A DNA stretch of 63,764 nucleotides, filler included, from Octopus bimaculoides (GCF_001194135.2; 6 parts of 6 records of this genome joined end to end with filler, not necessarily neighbours in it), one strand, 5' to 3'; shown: positions 37,943 through 55,713, counted from the whole stretch's first letter. Program-made: numbers and translations. Notes: a model not told the origin generated them from the letters alone.

Positions 37943-38076
37943 TTCCCACCGCTTCTTCTATCTGAAACTACAGAAGGTCGATATTTGTGATGTGGTGCCG
38001 AGAACGTGAGAATATATCCACCTACTAAGTAACTTTATATAGCAAAACTACGTTTATGTTTAAAACGCAACATCGT

Positions 38077-38120
<44 letters not shown>

Positions 38121-38660
38121 ACACACACGCACGCGCACACACTCACACGTGAATATGCACATGCGCGCATACACGCATATACACATGCGTGTATATAAAC
38201 GTGCTTGCCTACACACACGTGTGTGTGTGTGTGTATTTGTATGTTTTTTCTTATCAAAACACTAGCTATAAAAAAAATCACACGAAAAGCGTAACATATC
38301 GAGTTCTATTTCTTTCGTAAATCCATTCTCATATACGTAAGGTATATGATAAGCATAGACCCCATTCATAGAAATATTCCCCATTCCTTAACTGGTACTA
38401 TAATTTATCGACCCCGAAGAGATGAAAAACAAAGCTGACTTCGGTAAGGTCTGAGCTCAGGTTGTAAAACCGCGTAACAAAATACCGCAAGTATTTTTGT
38501 TCGACACTAACATCTCAAGCGATTTCTTCGTCAAATACGTAGTTAACGATAAAATAAGTTGCAGACTGAAAATTAAAAATTGCCTAAGACTCTTGAAGGC
38601 AACGCCACTACATATTCTGACAGAATATATCAGTCATACATATATCTTTATCTGTATCTA

Positions 38661-39350
38661 CTGTCCCATAAGTTCTGTCCGATTTTACCTTTTTAAAAAT
38701 TGAATGAAATGTAATAGTATTTTAGAATGTCTAATGGAATTAGAAATTATTTTTATGCATTTGTGTACATTTACACTAACTGAATATTATTTTACAGAAT
38801 AATAGAATTAAAATTTCTTTGATTAAAACCCTTTCTAACATGGAAGTATCCAAAGAGCATTTAAGGCACATAATGCTTTATGAGTACAAAAATGGAAACT
38901 TTGCAGCCGAAGCGACTCGAAACCTACACTCAGTTTATGGAAAAGAATGCTTCAGAAGATGGTTTGCAAAATTCAGAAGTGGAGATTTCAGCCTTGAAGA
39001 TGAAGATCGAACAGGACGTCCAGTTGAGTTTCATGATAAGCTCCTTGAAGCATTACTTGAAGAAGAAAATCCTGCATTATCGGTTGAAGAATTGGCAATA
39101 AAGCTTAGTTCAAACCATACAACTGTTTATCGTCATCTTCAACAACTTGGAAAGGTTCCTAAACTTGGAAAATGGGTGCTTCATGAATTATCCGAAAGCA
39201 ACCGCAAATTCCGAGTTGACATCTGCTCTTCTCTCCATTCTCGCGAACTCATTTCACTCTTTTTGGATAGACTTGTGACAGGGAACGAAAAATGGATCTG
39301 CTATCGGAATGTTAAACGTCGTTAACAGTGGCTTGGTAAAAGTGAAAAAA
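38661..39350 (+). mobile_element. Mariner transposon, 5' portion with truncated transposase (ORF 38840-39325)
   Basis: TA then terminal sequence ctgtcccataagttctgtccgatttt; MEVSKEHLRHIMLYEY...FRRWFAKFRSGDFSLED..GRP, mariner WVPHEL variant (WVLHEL) and LVTGNEKW (first catalytic D of TGDEKW changed to N); stop at 39323; breaks off at 39350. Confidence 0.93.
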
Positions 39351-39654
39351 GCTGCCGTACCTTTGTAATCCCCATTAGACTCATCCAACTCTTTCCAAAT
39401 CCTTTGCACTGTCCTCAGAATGACACCCAAACACTCTGAAATGTTCGTATTGGAGCTTCTGGCGCGAATGTCAAGCAGTACAGCATATCGTTTTCAAATT
39501 TCTGGCAGAGTGAATTGCGTCATGGTGCTGTTTTTCTCACAGACTGTGCCCAACTGACCCGACTATACTGTGTGGTCGAAAAAATCAAAAACTAACAATG
39601 TGCATACGCGATATTGAAAATATAAAATGGCGACAATTTACTCATCGTACCCTG
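39351..39654 (-). mobile_element. Tc1/mariner (maT/DD37D-like) 5' fragment
   Basis: Begins CAGGGT at 39654 on the minus strand; inverted copy (roughly 85% identity by eye) of 40994-41286. Confidence 0.8.
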
Positions 39655-39893
39655 CACTCACACACACAAACATGTATGTATATGTATATATGCGTGAGTA
39701 GTCTAAGAGTGGGTATATTATCCGAAATGTACAGTATTATATATCCATCACGACTGATCTTACCAATCGGTTTCGCTCAAGGATTGTATTCCTTTCGCGA
39801 AACCGATTTGGTAAGATCAGCCGCGATGGCTATATAATACTGTACATTTAGATTAATATTTATATCGTATATATATATATATCTTTTATATCA

Positions 39894-39953
<60 letters not shown>

Positions 39954-40047
39954 GTGTCTGTCTATCTATCTGTGTGTGTGCGTGTGTGTGTGTGTGTGCG
40001 TGTGTGTTTGATTGTTCTTCTAATCAGTTTTTGCTATCTACTTGCAG

Positions 40048-40128
40048 AACCGGCTAACAGATGAATTGCAGCTCTTCAAAATTCAAGCCTCTCTCTTTTA
40101 TCCAATCAAATTAAAGGAAATTATTCTG
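40048..40128 (+). CDS. Possible upstream exon of the DUF885 gene
   Basis: Acceptor ...ctatctacttgcag|; the only open frame is NRLTDELQLFKIQASLFYPIKLKEIIL, and S.FY.P weakly resembles the DUF885 segment before exon A. Donor uncertain (CTG|gtgaat or later). Confidence 0.25.
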
Positions 40129-40423
40129 GTGAATCACATCCCAAATGACACGTGGTACGGTATATTATTTGTTCTATATTCTCTCCTATGCATGTGTGCG
40201 AGTGTGCGAGTGTGCGCATGCACACAAATTAAACTAGTCATGTTTTGAAGTTCCCTTGTGACTGTTTTAATATTTTTTGTCCCGGATTTACTTACAAAAA
40301 GACTCCAGTGAGTCCTGAACCCCACGACCCGTGAACCTGTAATCTAATAACAGGACTGATGCCTAATCGCCAAATTTTGCTTCTGCGCGGGGACAGATAC
40401 ATGACACCATAGCACAAAATGAC

Positions 40424-40488
<65 letters not shown>

Positions 40489-40993
40489 GGTGGTGGTGGT
40501 GGTGGTAGTGGTTTGTAAATAACACTGGTTAGAAACACACAAAAGAAAATGTTAAGTTTCCCATCGGAAAGTCGGTTGGTCTNNNNNNNNNNNNNNNNNN
40601 NNNNNNNNNNNNNNNNNNNNNNNNNNNNNNNNNNNNNNNNNNNNNNNNNNNNNNNNNNNNNNNNNNNNNNNNNNNNNNNNNNNNNNNNNNNNNNNNNNNN
40701 NNNNNNNNNNNNNNNNNNNNNNNNNNNNNNNNNNNNNNNNNNNNNNNNNNNNNNNNNNNNNNNNNNNNNNNNNNNNNNNNNNNNNNNNNNNNNNNNNNNN
40801 NNNNNNNNNNNNNNNNNNGCTGTTGGTGAACGAATGGAATTGCGCGTTCTCTTCGGTTCGTTTACTGGGACTGTGGTAGGGAAATGCACATCGCAAGGTT
40901 GTACTTGATTTGGAGAAGTTACTGCAGAGTAGCTGGGCGTGCAAAATGTATTTACGGTTCATTTAATACCTAAGTGTACGCTCAAGCATATAA

Positions 40994-41545
40994 CAGGGTA
41001 GGATACGTAAATTGTCACCATTTTATATTTTTAATTTCGCGCATGCGCATTGTTTGTTTTTGATTTTGTCGACTACACAGTATAGTAGAGTCAGTTGGGC
41101 ACCATCTGTGAGAAAAAAACAGCACCATGATGCAATTCACTCTATCAGAAATTTGGAAACGACATGTTGCATTGTTTGGCATTCGCGCCGGAAGCTCCAA
41201 TACGAACATTTCAAAGTGTTTGTGTGTCAGTCTGAGGACAGTGCAAGGTTGGATGAGTCTAATGGTGATTACAAAAGTACGGCAGCATGGAAAACTCACT
41301 CTGATCGTTCTAATAAGAAAAGAACTTCTGAATGTGTTGGTGAGATCCAGGCCATGATTGACAACGATCCCTTCAAGTCAATCAGGTCCATCGCCAGGAA
41401 CATGGGAGTGTTTGAGTGTCTTGTCAGGTAGGTACTGCATGAAGACATTCGGTATTCCTCATACAAGATGAGAAAGGGCCAATTTTTATCCCAAGCCATC
41501 AAAGACAAGTGGAAAGACCGCACTACGAAGCTTTTCAACAAACAA
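40994..41545 (+). mobile_element. Tc1/mariner (maT/DD37D-like) 5' fragment with decayed HTH transposase
   Basis: CAGGGT terminus; frameshifted MMQFTLSEIWKRH...SLRTVQ / ...MIDNDPFKSIRSIARNMGV...LHEDIRYSSYKMRKGQFLSQ, typical of a Tc1/maT N-terminus. Confidence 0.85.
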
Positions 41546-41885
41546 TAGGTCGACAAATGTGGACTGAGATCGCCAAGATGTGGCAGCAGCGAGAGTTAAA
41601 CATAAATGTTGTTCCTGTTGTCATCGGAGCATTGGGTTCAATACCACCCAACCTATAGAAACATCCGGACACTTTAGAAATATCCTACAATCTTGGTGTA
41701 GAACAAAAATTGACTTTACTTGGAACTGCACGTATACTGCGTAGATTGTCGTCTGCCTGAGGTCCTTGGTGTGACTTGACAGACAGTACAAATCCCCGGT
41801 ATGCACATGTTCAATCTACATCATAATATTGGATTATTGTGCGACGTCTTTAAGTAACAACAACAACAACAACAACAACAACAAA
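41546..41885 (+). mobile_element. R4/Dong-like non-LTR retrotransposon 3' end
   Basis: TEIAKMWQQRELNINVVPVVIGALGSIPPNL*KHPDTLEI...QKLTLLGTARILRR.. is the C-terminus of a restriction-like endonuclease domain, followed by a 3'UTR and an (AAC)n tail. Confidence 0.85.
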
Positions 41886-42073
41886 AACAATAATAATTTT
41901 CATAAATATAATAATAAATTCAAATTACGACAAACGTATATATTTTTTTTTAGAAGCGTTGAGATGTCTTAGAAAGTTAAAGAAGTGATTTTAAATTCTC
42001 AATCGCAAAATAATGCTAATAATATAGCCTGAACAGGATAAACTACCCCTATTTTGCAGAGAAAAGTGTAGGT

Positions 42074-42148
42074 GGCTAGCTGTGGACTCGAACTCACATC
42101 CCCGTGATTACGCGTCACGATGCTTTGACCGATTAAGCTAAACTACCC
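42074..42148 (-). pseudogene. tRNA-Thr(CGT)-like pseudogene or SINE head
   Basis: D-stem GCTT/AAGC, anticodon stem CGTGA/TCACG around loop CGCGTAA, TTCGA T-loop. However U33 is G, the T-stem has a deletion and the acceptor stem is mismatched. Confidence 0.45.
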
Positions 42149-42209
42149 ACTACAAATACCTCTACAAATTTAAGATATATAAATCTCGCTTTATGAGACG
42201 CTCTCATAT

Positions 42210-42247
<38 letters not shown>

Positions 42248-42761
42248 NNNNNNNNNNNNNNNNNNNNNNNNNNNNNNNNNNNNNNNNNNNNNNNNNNNNN
42301 NNNNNNNNNNNNNNNNNNNNNNNNNNNNNNNNNNNNNNNNNNNNNNNNNNNNNNNNNNNNNNNNNNNNNNNNNNNNNNNNNNNNNNNNNNNNNNNNNNNN
42401 NNNNNNNNNNNNNNNNNNNNNNNNNNNNNNNNNNNNNNNNNNNNNNNNNNNNNNNNNNNNNNNNNNNNNNNNNNNNNNNNNNNNNNNNNNNNNNNNNNNN
42501 NNNNNNNNNNNNNNNNNNNNNNNNNNNNNNNNNNNNNNNNNNNNNNNNNNNNNNNNNNNNNNNNNNNNNNNNNNNNNNNNNNNNNNNNNNNNNNNNNNNN
42601 NNNNNNNNNNNNNNNNNNNNNNNNNNNNNNNNNNNNNNNNNNNNNNNNNNNNNNNNNNNNNNNNNNNNNNNNNNNNNNNNNNNNNNNNNNNNNNNNNNNN
42701 NNNNNNNNNNNNNNNNNNNNNNNNNNNNNNNNNNNNNNNNNNNNNNNNNNNNNNNNNNCTC

Positions 42762-42817
<56 letters not shown>

Positions 42818-43670
42818 GCACACACACACACACGCAGACACACAAACATAAACACACACATGGGTATGTATACACGCATACGTGTGCATTCATCTATGTA
42901 AAACAAGAAATAACTATCAGCAACATGGCATACTATTCTGACCAACCAACAGATCAACCAACCAGCCAACCAGCCAGCCAACCAACCGACCAGCCAGCCA
43001 ACAACCATCCGGCACAGACATCAATCAACGCAGAAATTCTTTGAGAAATGTCTTATCTTCTCGTTGTTCGCTTTTGTCTTTAACTACAAACCCCTAAACA
43101 TCCGACACCACATACCTCGAACATCTCCAACAGCTGTTTTTCTTTATCACACTGCTCCCATGTAAATCCTATGTATGTATGTATGTATGTATGTATGTAT
43201 GTATGTATGTATGTATGTATGTATGTATGTATGCATGTATGTGTGTATGTATGTATGTGTGTATGTATGTAAGTTCGCATGTAAGTTCCTACGTACGTAT
43301 GTATANNNNNNNNNNCATGTAAGTTCCTACGTACGTATGTATATAACTTATAAAATGTGAGTATATATGTATATAACTTATAACGTGTGTGTATACGCAC
43401 ATAATATATATATATAATATATATGTATATAATGTATATAAACTATATATATAATGTATATATATTTTATTTATAAAAAAATATATATATAATATAATAT
43501 ATCGTACACATATGTATGTGTGTGTTTATCATTGTGTATGTGTGTGTGTGTGTGTTTATCATTGTGTATGTGTGTGTGTGTGTACACATGCAGACACAGA
43601 AAGAGATATAGACAATAAATAACTACGTGCTTATGAACGCCTACATATAAATACATTCAAAGACAGCTAC

Positions 43671-43769
<99 letters not shown>

Positions 43770-44299
43770 TGTGTGTGTATGCGTGTGTATATCTGTCATT
43801 ACACAAATACAAAATCTGTCGAATGTTTAAATTATTAGACGGCTAGCTCAAGTATTGTTAGTTCATGTCTCCTACATAATTTCAGGATACAAGCTTTTTC
43901 ATAGCCTTACCTTGTAATTACACGACTTACATAAAACAAATATAAAAGAATGCAAACAGAAATGTGGAAAATTATCAGGTATGGTTTGATGCACAATTAA
44001 TACCAGAATCAAAACAGAGCTGCGACTGGATTAATTACAGAATCAACGCATAGATATTGCTGAAATACTATAGAGATGATTTTCATGATTAATTCATGAT
44101 TTCGAAAGCTACCATCAAGATCTGTGTAAGATTCCCGTGTCAACTTAACACCATAGCTTAGCTATTCTCAGTAAGACAGACTAAACATTTGAGGTAATAA
44201 GTAAATGTATACATGTATTGACGCAAGGTTTTGTGATCGTTCGAAACGCCTTTCATAAATAATCAAAAGTACAGTACCGTTTACGTTTTTCCTTTTTAT

Positions 44300-44710
44300 C
44301 ATTTTACTTGTTCCGGTCACTGGGTTGTGATTATCCTGAGCTGAAGGGTTTAGTCGAACTAATCGATATCAGTACAGTACTTATTTCAAAGTTTGGTACT
44401 AATTCCATCAGTCTTGTTTTTTTTTTATTTCTTTACCGAACTGCTAAGTTATACGGATGTAAACAAACCAACACCGGTTGTCAATCGGCTAATGGGGAAG
44501 GGGGACACAAGCACAAACACACACCCACGCAATCACATATACACGCAGACACTTACATACATACATACACACACGCGCACCTATATACGACGAGCTTCCA
44601 TACAGTTTTCGTCTACCAAATTGACTTATAAATTACTGTTCGACTCGGGGCTATAGTAGAAGGCATTTGCCTAAGGTGCCATGCGATAGAAGTGAACCAA
44701 AAACCACGTT
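44300..44710 (-). mobile_element. SINE family A, diverged full copy
   Basis: Tail, CA-rich core and head homology. Confidence 0.8.
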
Positions 44711-44714
44711 CAGT

Positions 44715-45800
44715 AAGCAAAGGCGTATAATCTTGAACTTATTCTGACCTCTCCTGGAATATGGAAGAAGTATTGTGAGCCTTATATGAGTTTCTGTTGC
44801 TTGCTTCTTCAACTTCCAGATGTACTTTCACCATGAGATGGAACTCAGTTTACTCTTGTATTTTGGTGGAAAAATGTGCTATTTCTATTGATCATGAGTG
44901 AGTTTTCAATAATGCAAATATATATTCTAGACATGCCATCAATATATGAAACATCAGGTCTATATACTAACTTTTTGTTGCGGTATTTAATTAAGGGGAC
45001 ATCTGACTACACTTCTAAAATTACAATCATGTTGGGTTGATAGTATATTTCTGGTTGCATTATTATGGTTGAATATCTGAGACCCTGTATTTTCTAAACA
45101 GCTCGAATTCATTGTAAAACTAGGACATGAGGAAGTGGGCGGTTTTTTTAGTGTCAAGAACCACTTTACTATATTTCTGGACATATTCATGTTGTTTGGC
45201 CTGTTAAGTCATATTATTTTCATATTTCGATGTAAAAACCGATTGGAGAATATTTTGTATAATTATTCGTATTGGTGAAGTCAAACTCCCTCTATTTCCT
45301 GTTATAGTAAAGGCTGTTTTATATTATATGTTCTTGCCTAAAGATAGTTGAAAAATGTGTGTAGTGACGTTATTGATTACATGTTTAATGATTGTACTCG
45401 GGCGGTTGGAAATATAATTTATGTATAATGTTCCCTCGTTCGGCTTACGCTACCGGTAGATACGCCTGTATTTGGATTTAATGTCCCGATAGTTTACCAT
45501 TTTTAAGTTCAATTTTATTGTGATTTAAATGGAACTCTTTGAATATGTTGATTAACTTTTCTAGCTTTGTCCATACCATGTTCACTCCTGTTGTAATACT
45601 GCGAAGTTCGTCATCTCTTTGTAATACTATATTAGCTTCTACACAATTTCTGCGTGTGTTTAGAATAGAATTTCATTTATTCGTTTCTATTTTTTATTAA
45701 GCTGTGTAATTATGGATGAAACTATGAAATACCTCCCCCACATAGTTTTTCTTATGTAATATTCAAGTCGGTCACTGACAAAGTGATACGGCTCTTTTGT
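44715..45800 (-). mobile_element. Decayed Penelope-like element (RT C-terminus to GIY-YIG region)
   Basis: Collinear remnants on the minus strand: RKPNEGTLYINYISNRPSTIIK (~45383-45455), MSRNIVKWF, CNFRSVVRCPLN, KYIWKLKKQ (~44800-44827); many stops and frameshifts. Confidence 0.75.
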
Positions 45801-46177
45801 TCAACACAAGACAGTTCTTGGGATTTTTAAATACGTGAAAGAGTGTGTACACATATGTAGATGCATGCGTGGATAAAATTGTACTTTTGTAATGCACACT
45901 ACTTTAGTAAACGAGTGCGTGCGTGCAGTGCCATATGCACCTGTGATTGTGTGCATGCGTGTGGTGCCATATGCACCTGTGATTGTGTGCATATGTTCAC
46001 TTTGGAAAACTCAAATGGAGAATCATTGGAATGTTTTACATAACTTTCCCTGTACTGTTAATCAATTGTATTTTGAGGATGCGAAATAATTTCTTTTGTT
46101 CTTCGTTGGACAAACCCAGACTTTTTAGAAATCCGTTCTTACGGAGCCCATTGTACCTATAAGTGGTATACACACAT

Positions 46178-46237
<60 letters not shown>

Positions 46238-47589
46238 NNNNNNNNNNNNNNNNNNNNNNNNNNNNNNNNNNNNNNNNNNNNNNNNNNNNNNNNNNNNNNN
46301 NNNNNNNNNNNNNNNNNNNNNNNNNNNNNNNNNNNNNNNNNNNNNNNNNNNNNNNNNNNNNNNNNNNNNNNNNNNNNNNNNNNNNNNNNNNNNNNNNNNN
46401 NNNNNNNNNNNNNNNNNNNNNNNNNNNNNNNNNNNNNNNNNNNNNNNNNNNNNNNNNNNNNNNNNNNNNNNNNNNNNNNNNNNNNNNNNNNNNNNNNNNN
46501 NNNNNNNNNNNNNNNNNNNNNNNNNNNNNNNNNNNNNNNNNNNNNNNNNNNNNNNNNNNNNNNNNNNNNNNNNNNNNNNNNNNNNNNNNNNNNNNNNNNN
46601 NNNNNNNNNNNNNNNNNNNNNNNNNNNNNNNNNNNNNNNNNNNNNNNNNNNNNNNNNNNNNNNNNNNNNNNNNNNNNNNNNNNNNNNNNNNNNNNNNNNN
46701 NNNNNNNNNNNNNNNNNNNNNNNNNNNNNNNNNNNNNNNNNNNNNNNNNNNNNNNNNNNNNNNNNNNNNNNNNNNNNNNNNNNNNNNNNNNNNNNNNNNN
46801 NNNNNNNNNNNNNNNNNNNNNNNNNNNNNNNNNNNNNNNNNNNNNNNNNNNNNNNNNNNNNNNNNNNNNNNNNNNNNNNNNNNNNNNNNNNNNNNNNNNN
46901 NNNNNNNNNNNNNNNNNNNNNNNNNNNNNNNNNNNNNNNNNNNNNNNNNNNNNNNNNNNNNNNNNNNNNNNNNNNNNNNNNNNNNNNNNNNNNNNNNNNN
47001 NNNNNNNNNNNNNNNNNNNNNNNNNNNNNNNNNNNNNNNCTTACCGTTCTTCTTCTTCTTCTTCTTCTTCTTCTTCTTCTTCTTCTTTTTCTTCTTCTTC
47101 TTCTTCTTCTTCTTCTTCTTCTTCTTCTTCTCTCTCTCTTTCTCTTTATTTATATATATATATTCTTTTATACTTTTACTTGCTTCAGTCGTTTGACCGC
47201 GTCCATACTGGAGCTCCATCTCGAAGGATTTTAGCTGAACAAATCGACCCCAGGACTTATTTATTAAAGCCTAGGACTTGTTCTATCGGTCAAACACACC
47301 AACACCGGTTGTCTCTCTTTTCTCTTTCTCTTTCACACACATACATAGGTTTCTCAGCCCACGTGCGAACTTATACGCGTCTCTTTATACACTTAAATAT
47401 TATGCGATTAGCAGACGGCCTCACAGCTAGAATCAACAACGTCCACTCATGTACATATGGATGTATATATGCACACACAAGTCAAGGAATTACCTAATGT
47501 CGCAAGTGCAATGGAGCCTTTATCGCATGTATGGAAACACCCACATATGTTGACAATGTCTTTTAAAATCAAGCGTAGTTTATTCTTTA

Positions 47590-48050
47590 TAATCTTCATA
47601 TAATTTACAGGCGTGCCTGTGTGGTGTGGAGCTTGCTTCCCAACCACATGGTTCCGGGGTTCAGTCCCACTGCATGAGACCTTCGGCAAGTGTCTTCTAT
47701 AGCCTCGGGCTGACCAAAGCTTTGTGAAAAGATTTGGTAGACGGAAACTGAAAGAAGTCTGTCGTATATGTGTGTGTGCATGTGTGCGTGCGTGTGTGTG
47801 TGTGTCTGTGTGTGTGTGTGTGTGTGCGCCTGTGTTTGTTCCCCCAACTCACCGCTTAAAACTAGTGTTGGTGTGTTTACATCCCTGTAACTTAGTGGCT
47901 CAGCAAAAGAGACTCATAGAATAAGTACTAGACTTTAAAAAAATAAGTCCTGGTGTTGATTTGTTCGACTAAAACCCTTCAAGGCGGTGCTCCAGCATGG
48001 CCGCAGTCAAATGACTGAAACAAGTTAAAAGAATAAAAAAATATAAAGAA
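47590..48050 (+). mobile_element. SINE family A, full copy
   Basis: Head, (GT)n core and tail all present. Confidence 0.9.
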
Positions 48051-48227
48051 TACATAGATGGTTATATATTTCGAAGTCTTGTATCATTGTTGTCATTGTT
48101 ATTGGTCTCATTGTTGTTATTGTTGTTATTGCTACCCACCTACCTACCTCAGTACCTGTATAAAGTCCTCCACCGCTGAGAGGGCGGTAACTTCGACTTT
48201 GAGAAACATATATCTACTGATCTAGAT

Positions 48228-49154
48228 CAATAGTTCTCAACCAAGGTCCATACGTGCACACTGAATTCATAAAACGGAAGAAAAGATTAAAAACGTAATG
48301 CGCATGTCAAAGTAAGACGGTAGAGGAGAATAAAACAAGTTATATGATGGTCTGCATGCTACGTCCAACGCCACTATTACGCAGATTTGCTGCAATCATC
48401 TTGTGTTAGTAATCACATTATGCTGAGACCCCCTTTGGTCATAACTGACCATGGGATTGCACCTAGAAAGTTACCCTCCGAGGAACAAGTTCGGGCAAGT
48501 TTGTTTATGGAAGACCAGCAGTCGCCCATACATACCGGTCTCCCCTCTCCACGCCACCAGTGTTATCCAAGGGAAAGGCAAAGGGGCCGATACAGCTTGG
48601 CACCTGTGAGGTCGCAACTCATTTCTACAGCTGAGTGAACTGGAGCAGCGTGAAATAAAGTGTCTTGCTCAAGAACACAACACACAGCCCGGTCCGGGAT
48701 TTGAACTCACAACCTCGCGATCGTAAGCTAGACGCTATAACCACTGAGCGATGTGCCTTCACAGTAATCACACTGTATATAACATAATTATGAATACCAA
48801 GCAGCACAAATATTGATTTCAAATTTCAGCACAAGGTCAGCAATTTTGGGGGAGGGAGTAAGTCGATTGCATCGACCCCAGTACTCAACTGGTACTTATT
48901 TTATCGACCTCGATAGGATGAAAGGCAAAGTCGACCTGGGTTGAATTTGAACTCAAAACGTGAAGGCGGACGAAATGTCGCTAATCATTTCGCCCGGCAT
49001 GCCAGCAGTTCTGCCAGCTGATTACCTTAAGCAGCTCAAATATTAATATGGAATTTTTAAAATCGTAATAATTGTTTTAAAAAATTTGTGGCGCACCTAC
49101 TAGATACCAGATGTGACGCGCCGTGTCCCGCTGCGCTCCACTTGAGAACCACTG
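48228..49154. mobile_element. Possible old hAT/Charlie element with nested SINEs
   Basis: Left end caatagttctcaa after atctagat (Charlie-type NTCTAGAN target); right end ttgagaaccactg followed by aacgagac (5/8 match to the left flank). Confidence 0.35.
48815..49030 (-). mobile_element. SINE family B copy
   Basis: Reverse complement of family B. Others at ~23005-23120, 38395-38480, 57118-57300, 58795-59140 and 59315-59373 (all minus). Confidence 0.88.
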
Positions 49155-49385
49155 AACGAGACTATAGCTGTTTAGGTAGGTAGGTAGGTAGGTAGGTAGG
49201 TAGGTTGGTTGGTAGGTAGGTGAATTGGCTTTCCTATCTTACTGCATAACTATTTTGCAGCCTAAATCCATCTAACTCTCTAAATCCATATAATTCTCTA
49301 AATGCACCGTATCCTATGCACCCAAGATATTCTAATAACCGTTCGTTTCATTATTTATCTACCAATGTGTGAATCTTTTCTCCAG

Positions 49386-49553
49386 GAGTATATTCCAGCT
49401 GCCAGACCAAACGCCGGTCTCTACTCCCTGAAAGACGGTATTAAATATTATGAGGCGTGCCTCAAATGGTATTTTGGCTACAATATAACTGCTACTGAAG
49501 TATATAACCTTGGTATAAGTGAAACGAATCGCATAGCAAAGAAAATGAAGGAG
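49386..49553 (+). CDS. DUF885-family protein, internal exon A (phase 0-0)
   Basis: Acceptor ...cttttctccag| and donor GAG|gtaagt; 168 nt = 56 codons EYIPAARPNAGLYSLKDGIKYYEACLKWYFGYNITATEVYNLGISETNRIAKKMKE, matching the recalled DUF885 pattern EY.P..R...G...L..G..YY..CL.W......T..E+..+G+.E..RI...M. Confidence 0.88.
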
Positions 49554-50267
49554 GTAAGTGATTGTTCTATTCTCTCAGCAGCGAACGGTTTTCAAAAGAC
49601 AAGTTTTAATTCAAAACTTCGATGTAATGCCGTCTTTTAATATAATTCTTATAAATGGATCCTTTGTGCACATTATATTAAATAAGTTAAGTAGTCGTCA
49701 AGAATAACGTAAGGGCTGCTGTGAAGGCATCTAGACGACCCTGGGGNNNNNNNNNNGTGATCGATGCCAGTAGAATGCCACTTGTACACAAGTCTAAGCT
49801 CGATCAGTCTGGGTCGGGTCACCTGGATGAAAGTGTATGTTGTAAGACATGAAACATCCAGGGACACCAAGATACAACGCTGACGATCAGTCCGAGTATT
49901 GTAACTGTAAACGTATGTTGAACTGTCGTGTTTTCATGCAAATGATACATGAGTAAATAACCCCAGTGAAATGTATTTTGCTTATAAATAGGATAATTTC
50001 ACGTCTGCCGGCTTACAATAGAATATACATCTGCTTAGTGAGTCTCTCATTGCTTTTTCGTCATGTACAATTATGGCTATACTTCGTTGAAGAGGTGTAA
50101 TAAAACCGAAACATATTCGGGAACGTCTCTCATTCGGCCAAATTATTGAAATAGTATTGGACATCGAGCAATTGCTTTCTTTTCCTTACCGCGTAATTAT
50201 AATCAACAGGATTACTCCATTGATCACCACATTTAATATACTGACAACTTAACTCTCTTTAATCTTT

Positions 50268-50468
50268 CCCTTTTACTTGTTTCAGTCATTTGACTGCGGC
50301 CATGCTGGAGCACCGCCTGTAGTCGAGCAAATCGACCCCAGGACTTATTCTTTGTAAGCCTAGTACTTATTCTATCGGTCTCTTTTGCCGAACCGCTAAG
50401 TTACGGGGACGTTAACACACCAGCATCGGTTGTCAAGCGATGTTGAGGGAACAAACACAGACACACAA

Positions 50469-50533
<65 letters not shown>

Positions 50534-50692
50534 TACGACGGGTTTCTTTCAGTTTCCGTCTACCAAATCCACCCACAAAGCTTTGGTCTGCCCGAGGCTA
50601 TAGTAGAAGACACTTGCCCAACGTGCCACGCAGTGGGATTGAACCCGGAACCATGTGGTTGGTAAGCAAGCTACTTGCCACACAGCCACTCC
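50268..50692 (-). mobile_element. SINE family A, full near-consensus copy
   Basis: Same head, microsatellite and tail structure on the minus strand; CpGs retained. Confidence 0.92.
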
Positions 50693-51102
50693 TAACCTAA
50701 ATTGAATCCTTAACAAATTGATGGTAAATGTTTTCCTCCAAAATAATTCCACTTAATTTTTTCTGTCTCAAACAACAAACTATATGTTGGCATATGAAGT
50801 TTTTATGGGAACGCTCCACCATCATTCCTTTTGTCAATGCACATGTATTCACAGCAACAGGAGTGTATTTTCTCTGTATTGATCTCAAGACAGTCTATCT
50901 TTCTTGTTGATGGCACTGGATGTTGTTTCAGCAACAACATCATGCAGTATTATCAATGGCATTTTTTCACCAGTTGCTGATCATATATGTGTAATACCTT
51001 CCACAGAAATGTGACATAACCGACTTTATCTGTCGCATCTTAGCGTTTCAGGGCATCACTGTTTCTCGCGAATGTTTGTATGTATGAAAGGATACAAGTG
51101 TA

Positions 51103-51167
<65 letters not shown>

Positions 51168-51295
51168 AGAGCAGCAGCAGCAGCAGAACTGTGGACTTGA
51201 AAGGTCTTTCTATAAATTTGTTTTCCAATTGGCATTAGAAAGCTGTGAACCATCTGAAACTCAATCGATTACTGTATTCTTCACGTTTCCTTTAG

Positions 51296-51382
51296 GTTAT
51301 GTCACAGCTGAATTTCCACGGAGATTTAAAAGAGTTTTTCAACCACCTTAAAGATATTCCAGAATTTTACAACATTTCCGAA
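51296..51382 (+). CDS. DUF885-family protein, internal exon B (phase 0-0)
   Basis: Acceptor ...cacgtttcctttag| and donor GAA|gtaagt; 87 nt = VMSQLNFHGDLKEFFNHLKDIPEFYNISE, in frame with exon A and continuing the DUF885 pattern (+M..+.F.G....F...L...P.F). Confidence 0.85.
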
Positions 51383-51426
51383 GTAAGTTGCTATGAATTT
51401 CGTCTGTCTGTCTATCTATCTATCTA

Positions 51427-51489
<63 letters not shown>

Positions 51490-51785
51490 TTGTATGTATG
51501 TATGTATGTATGTATGTATGTCTGCCTGTCAATATATCATATAGGTGTAAAATGAAAGAGAACGACATTCATTTGATCACGTTTCGTAGAGTTCTAACAT
51601 ATTTCTATCAACAATTAGTTTTAAGAATCTCGTTGCTTAAAGTTTCACACGAGAGTGGAAATGTCACTCCTGGTCGTTCGAATGGTCGGAAGTGTTCGTT
51701 ATTCGTTCTTGGAAAAAAACTCATTGGCTAAACTTATTAATGATCTTAGAGAGTAGATGAGCACAGCAACGTGATTCCGAGTTTC

Positions 51786-51830
<45 letters not shown>

Positions 51831-53097
51831 NNNNNNNNNNNNNNNNNNNNNNNNNNNNNNNNNNNNNNNNNNNNNNNNNNNNNNNNNNNNNNNNNNNNNN
51901 NNNNNNNNNNNNNNNNNNNNNNNNNNNNNNNNNNNNNNNNNNNNNNNNNNNNNNNNNNNNNNNNNNNNNNNNNNNNNNNNNNNNNNNNNNNNNNNNNNNN
52001 NNNNNNNNNNNNNNNNNNNNNNNNNNNNNNNNNNNNNNNNNNNNNNNNNNNNNNNNNNNNNNNNNNNNNNNNNNNNNNNNNNNNNNNNNNNNNNNNNNNN
52101 NNNNNNNNNNNNNNNNNNNNNNNNNNNNNNNNNNNNNNNNNNNNNNNNNNNNNNNNNNNNNNNNNNNNNNNNNNNNNNNNNNNNNNNNNNNNNNNNNNNN
52201 NNNNNNNNNNNNNNNNNNNNNNNNNNNNNNNNNNNNNNNNNNNNNNNNNNNNNNNNNNNNNNNNNNNNNNNNNNNNNNNNNNNNNNNNNNNNNNNNNNNN
52301 NNNNNNNNNNNNNNNNNNNNNNNNNNNNNNNNNNNNNNNNNNNNNNNNNNNNNNNNNNNNNNNNNNNNNNNNNNNNNNNNNNNNNNNNNNNNNNNNNNNN
52401 NNNNNNNNNNNNNNNNNNNNNNNNNNNNNNNNNNNNNNNNNNNNNNNNNNNNNNNNNNNNNNNNNNNNNNNNNNNNNNNNNNNNNNNNNNNNNNNNNNNN
52501 NNNNNNNNNNNNNNNNNNNNNNNNNNNNNNNNNNNNNNNNNNNNNNNNNNNNNNNNNNNNNNNNNNNNNNNNNNNNNNNNNNNNNNNNNNNNNNNNNNNN
52601 NNNNNNNNNNNNNNNNNNNNNNNNNNNNNNNNNNNNNNNNNNNNNNNNNNNNNNNNNNNNNNNNNNNNNNNNNNNNNNNNNNNNNNNNNNNNNNNNNNNN
52701 NNNNNNNNNNNNNNNNNNNNNNNNNNNNNNNNNNNNNNNNNNNNNNNNNNNNNNNNNNNNNNNNNNNNNNNNNNNNNNNNNNNNNNNNNNNNNNNNNNNN
52801 NNNNNNNNNNNNCGAGGAATTGTATAAAAAAAATTGTTTAAAAAAATTTGTGTATTGGAGAAGTATGACCAATTCCTTGCGCATAAATTTTGACAGTAAA
52901 ATCTTATGTGGGCCCCCCATGGGCCATGTAAGCCCCGGTTAAACCTTTACTCTATAACGTTCCTTCCCGCTATAGTTAAATCAACACCTTCCTCTTCTCT
53001 TTACTCTGTCACTTAACTCATCAGTATTGTTCTCTCCTCTACACTCAGTCGATAGTCTGCAATTGCAATATCTTCGTCTCTTCTGAGGCGGCGAGCT

Positions 53098-53540
53098 GTC
53101 AGGCTGTGTGGTAAGTAGCTTGCTTACCAACCACATGGTTCTGGGTTCAGTCCCACTGCGTGGCACCTTGGGCAAGTGTCTTCCACTATAGCCTCGGGCC
53201 GACCAAAGCCTTGTGAGTGGATTTGGTAGACGGAAACTGAAAGAAGCCCGTCGTATATGTGTATATATATGTATATATGTATGTGTGTGTATATGTTTCT
53301 CTGTCTGTGTTTGCCCCCCCCCCCCNNNNNNNNNNNNNNNNNNNNNNCCCCCAAACATCGCATGACAACCGATGCTGGTGTGTTTACGTCCCCGTAATTT
53401 AGCGGTTCGGCAAAAGAGACCGATAGAATAAGTACTAGGCTTCCAAAGAATAAGTCCTGGGGGTCGATTTGCTCGACTAAAGGCGGTGCTCCAGCATGGC
53501 CACAGTCAAATGACTGAAACAAGTAAATGAGTAAAAGAGT
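53098..53540 (+). mobile_element. SINE family A, full bipartite copy
   Basis: tRNA-like head gctgtgtggtaagtagcttgcttaccaaccacatggttc.gggttcagtccc (A/B boxes), body, internal microsatellite, tail ...gctccagcatggcc.cagtcaaatgactgaaacaag(taaaagag)n. Confidence 0.92.
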
Positions 53541-53799
53541 AAATGTCGGGGAAAATGTTCAGTGGCATTACGTCCGTCTTTACGTTCTGAGTTCCAATTC
53601 CGCCGAGGTCGACTTTGCTTGTCAACCTTTCTGGGCCGATAAAATAAAGTACCAGTTGATTACCGGTGTCAATGCAATCGCCTTACCCCCTCCCCCGAAA
53701 TTGCCAGTCTTTTGTCCAAATTTGAAATCAATATCTTTGTCTGTTCTATAAACAGCCAATACTCTCGAATATTTTCCTCTTCTCTACATTTAGGCTACA

Positions 53800-54165
53800 A
53801 ATATGGCTCCGGTTTCAGTCCCAATATGTGGCACCTTCGGCTAGTATCTTCTACTATAGCCTCGGGCTGATCAGAGCCTTGTGAGTGGATTTGGTTGACG
53901 GAAACTGAAAGAAGCCCGTCGAATAATACTTGTGTGTGGAGGGGGTGTCTTTATGTTTGTGTTTACCCCAATCTCACCGCTTGACAACCGGTGTTGGTTT
54001 ACATCCCTGTAGCTTAGTGGTTAGGAAAAAAAGAGACCGATAAAATAAGGACCAGACTTTAAAAAAAAACAACAAATACTGGGGTTGATTTGTCCGATTA
54101 AATCCTTCAAAGCAGTGCCCCTGCATGACCACAGTCCAACGACTGAAATATGTAAAATGTAAATG
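53800..54165 (+). mobile_element. SINE family A, diverged copy
   Basis: Body and tail homology to the 53098 copy. Confidence 0.8.
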
Positions 54166-54299
54166 ATAAGAGATAAAACGTCTCTTTTTTTTTCTCTCTC
54201 CTTTGTTTTATATTTTTTCTTGAGCTCTAAGATTTACAAAGCCTGTTGTCCGATTAACGCGCACAAGTCACTGAAATTACAACATACCCTGAACGGGAC

Positions 54300-54760
54300 G
54301 CTAATCCGTTGCAAGCAGGGACCAAAGCCAGTACTTTTGAGGGGGGTGGGGACAACACGATTCCTATTTCTTTACTGCCCACAAGGGGCTACACACAGAG
54401 GGGACAAACAAGGACAGACAAATGGATTAAGTCGATTATATCGACCCCAGTGCATAACTGGTACTTATTTAATCGACCCCGAAAGGATGAAAGGCAAAGT
54501 CAACCTCGGCGGAGTTTGAACTCAGAACATAGCGGCAGACGAAATACTGCTAAGCATTTCGCCCGGCGTGCTAACGTTTCTGCCAGCTCACCGATTCCAT
54601 TGACCCCCTACTATTTGACTGGTACTTTATTTTATCGACCCCGAAGGGATCAAAAGCAGAGCTGACTTCGACGGGATTTGAACTCATAATGTAAAGAGCC
54701 AGAAGCAATGCAGCTGGGTATTTCGCCCGACGTGCTAACGAGTCCGCTAGCTCGCTGCCT
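54300..54760 (-). mobile_element. Two tandem SINE family B copies
   Basis: ~54300-54595 and ~54605-54760. Plus-strand copies lie at ~53545-53725 and ~55440-55635. Confidence 0.88.
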
Positions 54761-55157
54761 TTCTCTCTTCTACACTCTGCTAATAAACTCACCAACGCCT
54801 TCTGCGTACTCGGTCATTACTCTACGTCTCAACCTCTCCTATACTCAAACAATAAATTCACAAACACCTTCCTCACCCCTTCACTTACTAAACAGACTGT
54901 AACCACTACATACTACTCCCTACACTGAGGCAATATCTTCTAATATCTTAGGTTCCTCTACACTCGATCAATAGACTCTCCAAACCACCGCCCTCAGTCC
55001 TCAAATTAGTCTCACTAAAACCATTCATTCTAAGCAATCGTTACTTTCTACCTGAAATATTTCCATTCCAACCCCGTAGATTATAAAGCAATACATTAAT
55101 TAATTAACTATGAATTGAGTATAATCACGTTAATTTAATGTTGTCCTCTCATTTCAG

Positions 55158-55252
55158 TCGAAAATAATAGATGAATACAGGGACATTATACAGAAACGAG
55201 TGAATCCAGTTTTATTCGATATATTCCACCGTGTTCCACTTGAAACGGTCAG
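55158..55252 (+). CDS. DUF885-family protein, internal exon C (phase 0-2)
   Basis: Acceptor ...gtcctctcatttcag| and donor CAG|gtaaga; 95 nt = SKIIDEYRDIIQKRVNPVLFDIFHRVPLETV(R/S), in frame with exon B and matching ++..Y..II...+.P.L..+F...P. The contig ends 460 nt later. Confidence 0.82.
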
Positions 55253-55713
55253 GTAAGAATGATGATTTACTTAATGTAGATCCCATGTTTTTGCTTTTTA
55301 GAGTTAGGTCAGTCCCTACTAACAAAGTTAGGCTTATTCTTGTATATAGTTCGCTAAAAATCACTAACACACTAAAAATCCTTCACAATCGCACACACTC
55401 ACACTCGCACACGCTCTTAATAATGTATAAAATCACTAAGCCGGCGAGCTAGCAGAATCGAAAGCACGCGGGGCGAAATGCTTAGCGGTATTTCATCCGT
55501 CTTTAAATTCTGACCTCAAATTCCGCCGGAGTCAACTTTGCCTTTCATCATTTTGGAATCGATAAAATAAATACAAGTCGAGCACTGGGATCGATGTAAT
55601 CGACTTACGTCCTTGTGCCAAAATTTCAAACCACTCTTTTACTTTTTTCAGTCATTTAACAGTAGCTTGGCTGGGGTACCGCCTTGAAAGGTTTTTTTAA
55701 GTCGAACAAATCA

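What the first reader, a model, noticed from the sequence alone, without database searches (positions are those of the whole stretch)
49386..55252. Intron-containing DUF885-family gene, a bacterial-type family in a cephalopod
Seen: three exons with canonical splice sites join in phase into 116 codons that match DUF885 motifs. Known: DUF885 is mainly a bacterial family of unknown function, with a C-terminal HExxH-like motif (HEg.PGHH) suggesting a zinc peptidase fold, and a patchy eukaryotic distribution including marine invertebrates. Inference: this is either an anciently transferred or a differentially retained gene, fully intronised. It looks divergent (KWYFGY where KWH..T is usual), which may point to a lineage-specific paralogue. 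The N-terminal half and the catalytic C-terminus are missing (gaps, contig end at 55713).
Basis: partly seen in the sequence, partly recalled or inferred. Interest (0 to 1): 0.7.

Follow-up and report, generated by a model that had tools for sequence, protein, structure and literature searches.

The report
Octopus DUF885 gene fragment, vertically inherited
The three exons are real and belong to an already annotated octopus gene (LOC106870641) of the DUF885 family, whose intron positions are shared with a limpet, a horseshoe crab and amphioxus; it is therefore an old animal gene and not a bacterial import, and is ordinary apart from the family's unknown biochemistry.

Summary
Exons 49386-49553, 51296-51382 and 55158-55252 (+) have AG/GT borders and join into 116 stop-free codons. 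These hit Pfam DUF885 at E=4e-18 (66.7 bits; cut-off 32.4).

The three assembly gaps lie in introns and hide no coding sequence between these exons.

The 85-nt exon that should follow it is absent from the sequenced DNA, presumably in a gap.

The gene is Octopus bimaculoides LOC106870641 (UniProt A0A0L8HHJ7; XP_052830498.1). Full-length orthologues of 639 aa in O. vulgaris and Argonauta carry the HExxPGHH and EGWxxYxE motifs.

All intron positions and phases around these exons are identical in Argonauta, Lottia, Limulus and Branchiostoma. In a tree, the cephalopod genes sit inside an all-mollusc clade (99% bootstrap). The window exons are under purifying selection (dN/dS about 0.05).

Transfer into cephalopods or molluscs is therefore refuted. 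'KWYFGY' is the signature of a mollusc-wide orthogroup, not a sign of divergence.

The likely function, inferred and not shown, is a secreted or GPI-anchored zinc peptidase with a two-lobed fold like bacterial DUF885 structures.

Already known; low interest.

The parts
40048..40154 (+). Newly recognised coding exon 'Z' (107 nt; starts in phase 0, ends in phase 2). It encodes NRLTDELQLFKIQASLFYPIKLKEIILVNHIPNDT plus the first two bases (TG) of the next codon, Trp in the orthologues.
   Evidence: tblastn with the O. vulgaris orthologue P0169, residues 191-229: 92% identity, E=4e-17. Borders are cag|AAC and TG|gtacgg. The equivalent exons are 107 nt in Argonauta and Branchiostoma and 104 nt in Limulus, with the same phases. 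It is absent from RefSeq model XP_052830498.1.
40155..49385 (+). Intronic stretch that should contain one further 85-nt exon, encoding about (W)TEIRHKIQNKVTKQIAPSYKNFKRFIEE. That exon is not in the sequenced bases, so it probably lies in one of the gaps at 40583-40818, 42248-42758, 43306-43315 or 46238-47039.
   Evidence: A sliding search of all frames with three cephalopod peptides gave at most 8 identities in 28, which is chance level. Argonauta has this exon, 85 nt long, between its Z and A equivalents. 107+85=192 nt, so leaving out both exons keeps the frame; this may be why the RefSeq model omits exon Z as well.
49386..49553 (+). Exon A (168 nt, 56 codons, phase 0 at both ends): EYIPAARP...AKKMKE
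   Evidence: The phase-0 intron before 'EY' is conserved in Lottia, Branchiostoma, Limulus and Argonauta. The family-invariant residues Y, R, Y, G and E (P0169 positions 256, 261, 276, 297, 300) are retained.
49554..51295 (+). Intron A-B (1742 nt as assembled), containing the 10-N gap at 49747-49756, microsatellites and SINE-like repeats
51296..51382 (+). Exon B (87 nt, 29 codons, phase 0 at both ends): VMSQLNFHGDLKEFFNHLKDIPEFYNISE
   Evidence: 100% identical to the O. vulgaris protein. The equivalent exons are 87 nt in Argonauta, Branchiostoma and Limulus, and 90 nt in Lottia.
51383..55157 (+). Intron B-C, containing the gaps 51831-52812 and 53326-53347 and inverted SINE-like repeats
   Evidence: No profile match is found inside it.
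55158..55252 (+). Exon C (95 nt, 31 codons plus 2 nt; phase 0 at the start, phase 2 at the end): SKIIDEYRDIIQKRVNPVLFDIFHRVPLETV(R)
   Evidence: The exon is 95 nt with the same phases in Lottia, Branchiostoma, Limulus and Argonauta.
55253..55713 (+). Start of the next intron. The piece ends before the next exon (84 nt in Argonauta) and before the exon that carries HExxPGHH.
   Evidence: The UniProt model ends here only because reading through the donor site gives AGG TAA.

Best explanation
The piece holds four internal coding exons (Z, A, B, C) of the Octopus bimaculoides gene LOC106870641. This is the cephalopod member of a mollusc-wide orthogroup of the DUF885 family.

Shown:
- The exons are real, correctly spliced and under purifying selection.
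- The gene is orthologous to complete 639-aa genes in O. vulgaris and Argonauta.
- Its exon-intron structure is shared with a limpet, a horseshoe crab and amphioxus, so the gene was already intron-bearing in the bilaterian ancestor and reached octopus by vertical descent.
- The short or odd O. bimaculoides protein models are artefacts of a gappy assembly. These are the 124-aa and 382-aa models and the 558-aa model, which has a microsatellite-coded stretch where the catalytic motif belongs.

Inferred:
- The full protein is made with an N-terminal signal peptide and a C-terminal hydrophobic tail typical of a GPI-anchor signal, so it would work outside the cell.
- It folds like the bacterial DUF885 proteins 3o0y, 3iuk and 3u24, into a mostly helical, two-lobed body of the kind seen in M32, M3 and M2 metallopeptidases.
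- It would bind zinc through histidines of the invariant HExxPGHH helix and a glutamate of the invariant EGWxxYxE helix, and would cut short peptides (carboxypeptidase or oligopeptidase action).
- The window's exons encode the helices just upstream of the small beta-sheet and the catalytic helix.
For: Exons and Pfam hit. Fourth exon.

Identity with UniProt A0A0L8HHJ7 and XP_052830498.1 (LOC106870641), a gene span of about 100.9 kb on a 55.5-Mb chromosome.

Orthologues with LHETNPGHHFQ and MEGWATYAE. H410, E411, P414, G415, H416, H417, G456, W457, Y460 and E462 are invariant in 88 sequences, and E455 is nearly invariant.

Identical intron positions and phases: Lottia 242.0/298.0/328.0/359.67; Branchiostoma 196.67/225.0/281.0/310.0/341.67; Limulus 198.0/232.67/261.0/317.0/346.0/377.67; Argonauta 194.0/229.67/258.0/314.0/343.0/374.67.

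NJ tree with 100 bootstraps: cephalopods 100, all-mollusc clade 99, lophotrochozoan clade 100, animals versus bacteria 100.

Purifying selection against Argonauta over 151 codons: pN 0.10, pS 0.71, dN/dS about 0.05.

AlphaFold model of the O. vulgaris orthologue: pLDDT 92.2, pTM 0.88. Foldseek: 3o0y at E=1e-26 with TM 0.76/0.83, then 3iuk and 3u24; weaker hits to ACE2, T. cruzi M32 carboxypeptidase and oligoendopeptidase F at E about 7e-3, probability 0.96-1.0.

Literature: Pfam places DUF885 in the Peptidase_MA clan (PMC12572635). DUF885 proteins of about 600 aa are reported from spider venom, with M32-like fold predictions, and in a snail venom-transcriptome study (PMC7682650, PMC11359391).
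Against: - I found no report of peptidase activity or zinc binding for any DUF885 protein.
- The motif is HExxPGHH and not the canonical HExxH, because position +4 is proline.
- Fold similarity to M32/M3/M2 enzymes is weak overall (TM about 0.3) and is not detectable by sequence profile.
- I could not inspect the model's coordinates, so the metal-site geometry is unchecked.
- For O. bimaculoides itself, the catalytic exon is outside the window and is absent from every protein model, so its presence is assumed from orthologues.
- The signal peptide and GPI anchor are read from hydrophobic ends only.
- The tree used one bacterial clade, the one nearest to the animal sequences, and a distance method.
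Confidence: 0.8

Rival explanations
1. The gene was acquired by horizontal transfer from bacteria into cephalopods (or molluscs) and gained introns afterwards.
For: The Pfam family is named as bacterial. A Marinimicrobia-type bacterial clade is 33-37% identical to the animal proteins, as close as the chelicerate hits. DUF885 was listed as a transfer candidate in Dictyostelium (PMC3188802).
Against: Five intron positions with their phases are identical in Octopus, Argonauta, Limulus and Branchiostoma, and four of them also in Lottia. Cephalopods nest inside an all-mollusc clade (99%) within a lophotrochozoan clade (100%), with bacteria outside (100%). The best 20 named hits of the exon peptide are all eukaryotic.
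Confidence: 0.02
2. The family entered an early animal or early eukaryote by a very ancient transfer from bacteria. It was then inherited vertically, with many losses.
For: The eukaryotic distribution seen here is patchy: molluscs, annelid, nemertean, brachiopod, cnidarian, chelicerates, amphioxus and chytrid fungi, plus Dictyostelium. Bacterial relatives are only moderately distant.
Against: Nothing here speaks directly against it. The same pattern fits an ancestral eukaryotic gene followed by losses. My tree cannot be rooted independently and samples only one bacterial clade.
Confidence: 0.2
3. The O. bimaculoides copy is a decaying pseudogene, or a non-catalytic remnant that has lost its active-site exons.
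For: All three O. bimaculoides protein models lack HExxPGHH. The 558-aa model carries a microsatellite-coded stretch in its place and also lacks two N-terminal segments. The 85-nt exon is not in the sequenced DNA.
Against: The four exons in the window are open, have canonical splice sites and keep every family-invariant residue. dN/dS against Argonauta is about 0.05. Identity to O. vulgaris is 88-100% per exon. The C-terminal half is well conserved in the models. The region has many N gaps. Leaving out exons Z and the 85-nt exon together keeps the frame, which would fit a model built around a gap.
Confidence: 0.07
4. The protein is real and conserved but is not a peptidase. It could, for example, be a binding or scaffold protein that only keeps a gluzincin-like fold.
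For: The motif is not the canonical HExxH. No DUF885 activity was found in the searched literature. The solved structures are unannotated structural-genomics entries. A bacterial DUF885 protein was pulled down as a vitronectin binder (PMC10281475).
Against: H, E, two further H, and an EGW...E helix are invariant across animals and bacteria (88 sequences), which is the pattern expected for a catalytic metal site. The fold matches to M2, M3 and M32 enzymes, although weak, are the only non-DUF885 matches with high probability.
Confidence: 0.25

Closest known systems
Octopus bimaculoides LOC106870641 (XP_052830498.1, XP_014772271.1; UniProt A0A0L8HHJ7, annotated PF05960)
   Same: It is the same gene. 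The 116 codons are 100% identical to residues in all three models.
   Different: The public models are incomplete. The UniProt model starts in the upstream intron (MCESFLQ) and stops by reading into the downstream intron. The current RefSeq model omits exon 40048-40154 and the following 85-nt exon, and has a microsatellite-derived stretch in place of the catalytic exons.
Cephalopod orthologues: Octopus vulgaris 'DUF885 domain-containing protein' (P0169, 639 aa) and Argonauta hians LOC115219656 (P0170, 639 aa)
   Same: Identity over the window's exons is 88-100% (O. vulgaris) and 76-97% (Argonauta). Argonauta has identical exon sizes and phases. Both share the KWYFG(Y/F)NIT motif.
   Different: They are complete: signal peptide, HETNPGHH, EGWATYAE and a hydrophobic C-terminal tail. 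The Argonauta gene spans about 35.5 kb, against about 101 kb in O. bimaculoides.
Bacterial DUF885 structures 3o0y (Colwellia 'lipoprotein'), 3iuk (Arthrobacter) and 3u24 (Shewanella)
   Same: The same Pfam family, and the same fold for the modelled orthologue (TM 0.76/0.83 to 3o0y). The profile E-value is 8e-122.
   Different: Only 16-24% identical in the structural alignments. They are bacterial lipoproteins or unannotated proteins with no introns, and their function is unknown.
Gluzincin two-lobed peptidases: M32 carboxypeptidases (T. cruzi MCP-1, 3dwc), M3 oligoendopeptidase F and neurolysin, M2 ACE2
   Same: They give the only other high-probability fold matches. Pfam places DUF885 in the same clan, Peptidase_MA (PMC12572635). 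FFAS matched a spider DUF885 protein to M32 folds (PMC7682650).
   Different: DUF885 has no canonical HExxH (it has HExxPGHH), no sequence-profile match and low global TM (about 0.3). This is a resemblance in likely mechanism, not membership.
DUF885 proteins reported in venom studies: Physocyclus mexicanus venom (599 aa) and Raphitoma purpurea PVC-83 (606 aa)
   Same: Animal DUF885 proteins of about 600 aa; the spider protein was identified in venom by proteomics.
   Different: Different lineages or paralogues. No expression data for the octopus gene were available here.

Membership tests
Pfam DUF885 (PF05960) | Match to the family HMM above the curated gathering score | tested here: met
   The 116-aa peptide scores 66.7 bits against a cut-off of 32.4, E=4.2e-18. 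The O. vulgaris orthologue scores 371.5 bits and covers profile positions 1-531 of 532.
Pfam DUF885 (PF05960) | Conserved HExxPGHH helix and EGWxxYxE helix | tested here: inconclusive
   Invariant in 88 homologues, including the O. vulgaris and Argonauta orthologues. In O. bimaculoides, EGWATYAE is present in the models, but the HExxPGHH exon lies outside the window and is missing from all models.
Pfam DUF885 (PF05960) | Fold of the solved DUF885 proteins | tested here: met
   AlphaFold model of the orthologue (pLDDT 92.2) against 3o0y: E=1e-26, TM 0.76/0.83. Matches to 3iuk and 3u24 as well.
Mollusc DUF885 orthogroup containing Lottia LOTGIDRAFT_231222 | Placement in a well-supported clade, with a shared sequence signature | tested here: met
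   All-mollusc clade of 19 sequences with 99% bootstrap. The W-Y-(L/F)-G-(Y/F/V) signature is shared.
Mollusc DUF885 orthogroup containing Lottia LOTGIDRAFT_231222 | Shared exon-intron structure | tested here: met
   Four intron positions and phases are identical between the octopus window and Lottia. They are also identical in Argonauta, Limulus and Branchiostoma.
Peptidase_MA gluzincins (M32/M3/M2-like) | Canonical HExxH zinc-binding motif plus a downstream Glu ligand | tested here: not met
   The motif is H-E-x-x-P-G-H-H, with proline at +4 and histidines at +6 and +7. A conserved Glu-containing helix follows about 45 residues later.
Peptidase_MA gluzincins (M32/M3/M2-like) | Fold similarity to solved members | tested here: inconclusive
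   Foldseek E about 7e-3 and probability 0.96-1.0 to ACE2, 3dwc and 2h1n, but TM only 0.27-0.37. No sequence-profile hit.
Peptidase_MA gluzincins (M32/M3/M2-like) | Zinc binding and peptide hydrolysis | not testable with these tools
   No biochemical report was found.
Horizontally transferred bacterial gene in a cephalopod | Recipient sequences nested within a bacterial donor clade, and absent from sister animal lineages | tested here: not met
   The animal-bacteria split has 100% support, and cephalopods sit inside mollusc and lophotrochozoan clades. Relatives occur in many animal phyla.
Horizontally transferred bacterial gene in a cephalopod | Introns absent or specific to the lineage | tested here: not met
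   Intron positions and phases are shared with a chelicerate and a cephalochordate.

The most novel reading that the evidence does not exclude
Animal DUF885 proteins could be an uncharacterised family of extracellular (secreted or GPI-anchored) zinc peptidases with a non-canonical HExxPGHH site. The family would date back at least to the bilaterian ancestor. It expanded in molluscs, and members have been reported from spider venom and from a cone-snail-relative venom study. The octopus gene would be its single well-conserved cephalopod representative and a convenient entry point for finding the substrate.
Probability: 0.45. Interest if true: 0.45.

Novelty: already known. Interest (0 to 1): 0.2.

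Why it matters
The immediate value is modest. The result removes a horizontal-transfer candidate: the exon-intron structure is conserved from octopus to amphioxus and horseshoe crab, and the tree follows the species relationships.

It also corrects the annotation of one gene. There is an extra exon at 40048-40154. The start and stop of the UniProt model are intron read-through artefacts. The current RefSeq model bridges assembly gaps and so lacks the catalytic region.

More broadly, DUF885 is a large, strongly conserved family with invariant metal-site-like residues and no known activity. It is present in many invertebrates and has been reported in venom studies. Working out its biochemistry would be worthwhile, but this window adds nothing unique towards that.

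Tried and rejected
1. A family-wide profile (51 full-length homologues) searched against all six-frame ORFs of the piece found only exons A, B and C and missed exon Z, because that region is poorly conserved. tblastn with distant homologues also missed it. Only the close O. vulgaris and Argonauta orthologues revealed it.

2. I considered that exon A might extend upstream, because the in-frame 'ESFLQ' before 49386 resembles the 'RFIEE' of the orthologues. I rejected this: the phase-0 intron directly before 'EY' is conserved in four other species, and the resemblance comes from the pyrimidine tract.

3. I first read the exon Z donor as phase 0 after TGG. The sequence shows the GT at 40155-40156, so the exon ends at 40154 in phase 2, matching the homologues.

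4. The search for the 85-nt exon in the sequenced bases gave nothing above chance.

5. Genomic look-ups failed for A0A0L8HHJ7, the O. vulgaris protein and the Exaiptasia protein. The O. bimaculoides chromosome locus was too long to be returned. I therefore could not check whether the catalytic exons exist in that assembly, nor test intron conservation in a cnidarian.

6. The first word-indexed search with the 116-aa peptide found only the gene itself.

7. Sequence and profile searches of the PDB gave only DUF885 entries.

8. Model coordinates are not exposed, so zinc-site geometry could not be measured.

Only one gene per cephalopod species appeared among the best 120 hits.

Full report
**Observation**

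Exon A is 49386-49553 (168 nt), exon B 51296-51382 (87 nt) and exon C 55158-55252 (95 nt), all on the + strand. Each is preceded by a pyrimidine-rich tract ending in AG and followed by GTAAG. Joined, they give 116 codons plus two bases with no stop, while the other two frames are full of stops.

The peptide matches Pfam DUF885 (PF05960) at E=4.2e-18. The score is 66.7 bits against a curated cut-off of 32.4, and the match covers profile positions 199-311 of 532. An exhaustive HMMER search of 1.8 billion representatives found 1182 relatives at E<=1e-3.

**Gaps**

The scan's program asked for continuity across the gaps to be tested first. The gaps at 49747-49756, 51831-52812 and 53326-53347 all lie inside the two introns.

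A profile built from 51 full-length homologues matches the three exons at contiguous positions 247-308, 307-335 and 335-364, and matches nothing else in the piece. In the Argonauta hians orthologue the equivalent exons are exactly 168, 87 and 95 nt and abut in the protein.

No coding sequence is therefore hidden in those gaps. The frame is fixed by the splice junctions and not by the estimated gap lengths. The exons are in the right order and on one strand, so the scaffolding is consistent.

**What the gene is**

The peptide is 100% identical to UniProt A0A0L8HHJ7 (Octopus bimaculoides, 124 aa). That model is an artefact at both ends. Its start, MCESFLQ, is read from the intron upstream of exon A. 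It ends because reading through the exon C donor gives AGG TAA.

The same 90% cluster holds XP_052830498.1, 'uncharacterized protein LOC106870641', 558 aa. Its gene spans about 100.9 kb on a 55.5-Mb chromosome of GCA_001194135.2.

A search with that protein found full-length orthologues in Octopus vulgaris (639 aa) and Argonauta hians (639 aa), a 642-aa transcript-derived protein, and an older 382-aa O. bimaculoides model.

In the alignment, the orthologues carry LHETNPGHHFQ and MEGWATYAE. The 558-aa O. bimaculoides model differs in three ways:
- It has a stretch coded by microsatellites (YTHTHIYTHIY...VCVCVCVCV) where the catalytic segment should be.
- It lacks a 42-residue N-terminal segment.
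- It lacks about 64 residues just before exon A.

**A fourth exon**

tblastn with the O. vulgaris protein found residues 191-229 at 40048-40164, with 92% identity and E=4e-17. The exon runs from 40048 (after ...acttgcag) to 40154 (TG|gtacgg). It is 107 nt long, starts in phase 0 and ends in phase 2.

The next exon of the orthologues is 85 nt and encodes about (W)TEIRHKIQNKVTKQIAPSYKNFKRFIEE. It is not in the sequenced bases of the piece: the best match in any frame was 8 identities in 28. It presumably lies in one of the four N runs between 40155 and 49385.

107+85=192 nt, so omitting both exons keeps the frame; this may be why the RefSeq model omits the exon that is present. The family-wide profile missed this exon because the region is poorly conserved.

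**Vertical descent**

I mapped exact splice junctions of relatives on their genomic loci. The phase-0 intron before 'EY', the phase-0 introns after exons A and B, and the phase-2 intron after exon C are all present at the homologous positions in four species:

| Species | Intron positions (residue.phase fraction) |
|---|---|
| Lottia gigantea | 242.0, 298.0, 328.0, 359.67 |
| Branchiostoma lanceolatum | 225.0, 281.0, 310.0, 341.67 |
| Limulus polyphemus | 261.0, 317.0, 346.0, 377.67 |
| Argonauta hians | 258.0, 314.0, 343.0, 374.67 |

The phase-2 intron after exon Z is also shared with Branchiostoma (196.67), Limulus (232.67) and Argonauta (229.67). Exon sizes of 168, 87 and 95 nt are the same in octopus, Argonauta, amphioxus and horseshoe crab. 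The gene therefore already had these introns in the bilaterian ancestor.

The best named hits of the exon peptide are all eukaryotic. They are molluscs (Mya, Pecten, Patella, Babylonia, Elysia, Potamilus, Haliotis, Pinctada), the annelid Owenia, the nemertean Tubulanus, the cnidarian Exaiptasia, Branchiostoma and two chytrid fungi.

I built a neighbour-joining tree from 54 named or cephalopod animal sequences and 7 sequences of the nearest bacterial clade (Marinimicrobia/Fidelibacterota type), using 560 columns and 100 bootstraps. Support values were as follows:
- bacteria versus animals: 100
- cephalopods monophyletic: 100
- an all-mollusc clade of 19 sequences (bivalves, chiton, gastropods, cephalopods): 99
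- that clade plus the annelid Owenia as its sister: 80
- a lophotrochozoan-only clade: 100

The limits are a distance method and a single bacterial clade. The tree says nothing about a transfer before the bilaterian ancestor.

**The 'divergent' motif**

The family consensus at this site is KWHLSxDxT. The glycine is shared by the whole 19-member mollusc clade. The motif marks an old mollusc orthogroup. It is not a cephalopod-specific or decaying copy.

**Functional state**

Over the 151 complete codons of the four window exons, O. bimaculoides and Argonauta differ at 10% of non-synonymous sites and 71% of synonymous sites. This gives dN 0.108, a saturated dS of about 2.2, and a ratio of about 0.05.

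Every family-invariant residue in this stretch is kept (P0169 positions Y256, R261, Y276, G297 and E300). These exons are under strong purifying selection. A pseudogene is unlikely, although the catalytic exons of O. bimaculoides could not be seen.

**Likely mechanism (inferred)**

The O. vulgaris orthologue covers the whole Pfam model (371.5 bits). Its AlphaFold model is confident, with pLDDT 92.2 and pTM 0.88.

Foldseek matches the bacterial DUF885 structures 3o0y (E=1e-26, TM 0.76/0.83), 3iuk and 3u24. It then matches ACE2, the Trypanosoma cruzi M32 metallocarboxypeptidase and oligoendopeptidase F more weakly (E about 7e-3, probability 0.96-1.0, TM about 0.3).

In 88 aligned sequences from animals and bacteria, H410, E411, P414, G415, H416, H417, G456, W457, Y460 and E462 are invariant, and E455 is nearly so. 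Pfam places DUF885 in the Peptidase_MA clan (PMC12572635).

The N terminus looks like a signal peptide. The C terminus ends in a hydrophobic tail, as in many homologues, which suggests a GPI-anchor signal. I therefore favour an extracellular zinc peptidase acting on short peptides.

The window's exons encode helices (about 187-215 and 255-360 in the model) that lead into the small beta-sheet (371-392) and the catalytic helix (401-411).

Several cautions apply:
- The motif is not the canonical HExxH.
- I found no report of DUF885 activity.
- Profile searches see no M32, M3 or M2 chain.
- I could not inspect the metal-site geometry.

**Comparison with what is known, and novelty**

The gene is annotated in UniProt (with PF05960) and in RefSeq. 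Animal DUF885 proteins have been noted before, in pholcid spider venom (with M32-like fold predictions) and in a Raphitoma venom-transcriptome study (PMC7682650, PMC11359391). DUF885 was listed as a transfer candidate in Dictyostelium (PMC3188802).

What this work adds is a corrected local gene structure and evidence against transfer into cephalopods. Verdict: already known, low interest.

The residual open question is the biochemical activity of an ancient, conserved, probably extracellular metalloprotein family. That question is real, but this window does not advance it in any unique way.

Noticed in passing
window 38819-39325 (+): A 168-aa ORF with the HTH domain of the Mos1 (mariner) transposase (Pfam HTH_48, E=8e-15). 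It is a mariner-type transposon remnant near the start of the piece, upstream of exon Z.
   Followed up: partly
window 39404-39654 and 40994-41246: Two inverted copies, about 250 nt each and 88% complementary, of a repeat that carries short transposon-like ORFs with no Pfam hit (...ESNGDYK.TAA...). They flank the newly found exon 40048-40154. Inverted repeats around an exon can favour exon skipping or circular RNA; this was not tested.
   Followed up: no
window 42074-42147 (-): A tRNA-like sequence. ARAGORN calls tRNA-Thr (CGT). The Rfam tRNA score is 29.8 bits, just above the gathering score of 29. It sits in an AT-rich intron next to a gap and is probably a tRNA pseudogene or the head of a tRNA-derived SINE.
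   Followed up: partly
window 50336-50687 and 53102-53462; also 47693-47971, 48853-49019, 53803-53925, 54424-54593, 55442-55613: Multiple direct and inverted copies (75-95% identical) of SINE-like interspersed repeats fill the introns. The pair 50336-50687 and 53102-53462 lies on either side of exon B.
   Followed up: no
window 38050-38200, 39850-40030, 40420-40510, 43130-43800, 50450-50530, 51100-51185, 51400-51530, 51790-51830: Dense microsatellites ((CA)n, (TCTA)n, (TAG)n, (TGTA)n, (TA)n), often directly beside the N gaps. This probably explains why the assembly breaks here, and why gene models pick up 'VCVCVC' or 'YTHTHIY' pseudo-exons.
   Followed up: no
L004 (Argonauta hians) compared with O. 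bimaculoides LOC106870641: The orthologous gene spans about 35.5 kb in Argonauta and about 101 kb in O. bimaculoides, with the same exon structure wherever it was mapped. The difference reflects intron expansion by repeats in Octopus.
   Followed up: partly
P0002/P0153 (Mya arenaria), P0014, P0027 (chytrid fungi), P0003 (Exaiptasia): Some eukaryotic DUF885 proteins contain two or three tandem DUF885 domains (1100-1700 aa) or internally duplicated segments. These may be real tandem fusions or merged gene models.
   Followed up: no
P0008 (Elysia), P0176 (Lymnaea), P0178 (Plakobranchus), P0219 (Elysia marginata): Several gastropod members of the same orthogroup carry an N-terminal ShKT (ShK toxin-like) domain fused to DUF885. 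The cephalopod orthologues do not have it.
   Followed up: no
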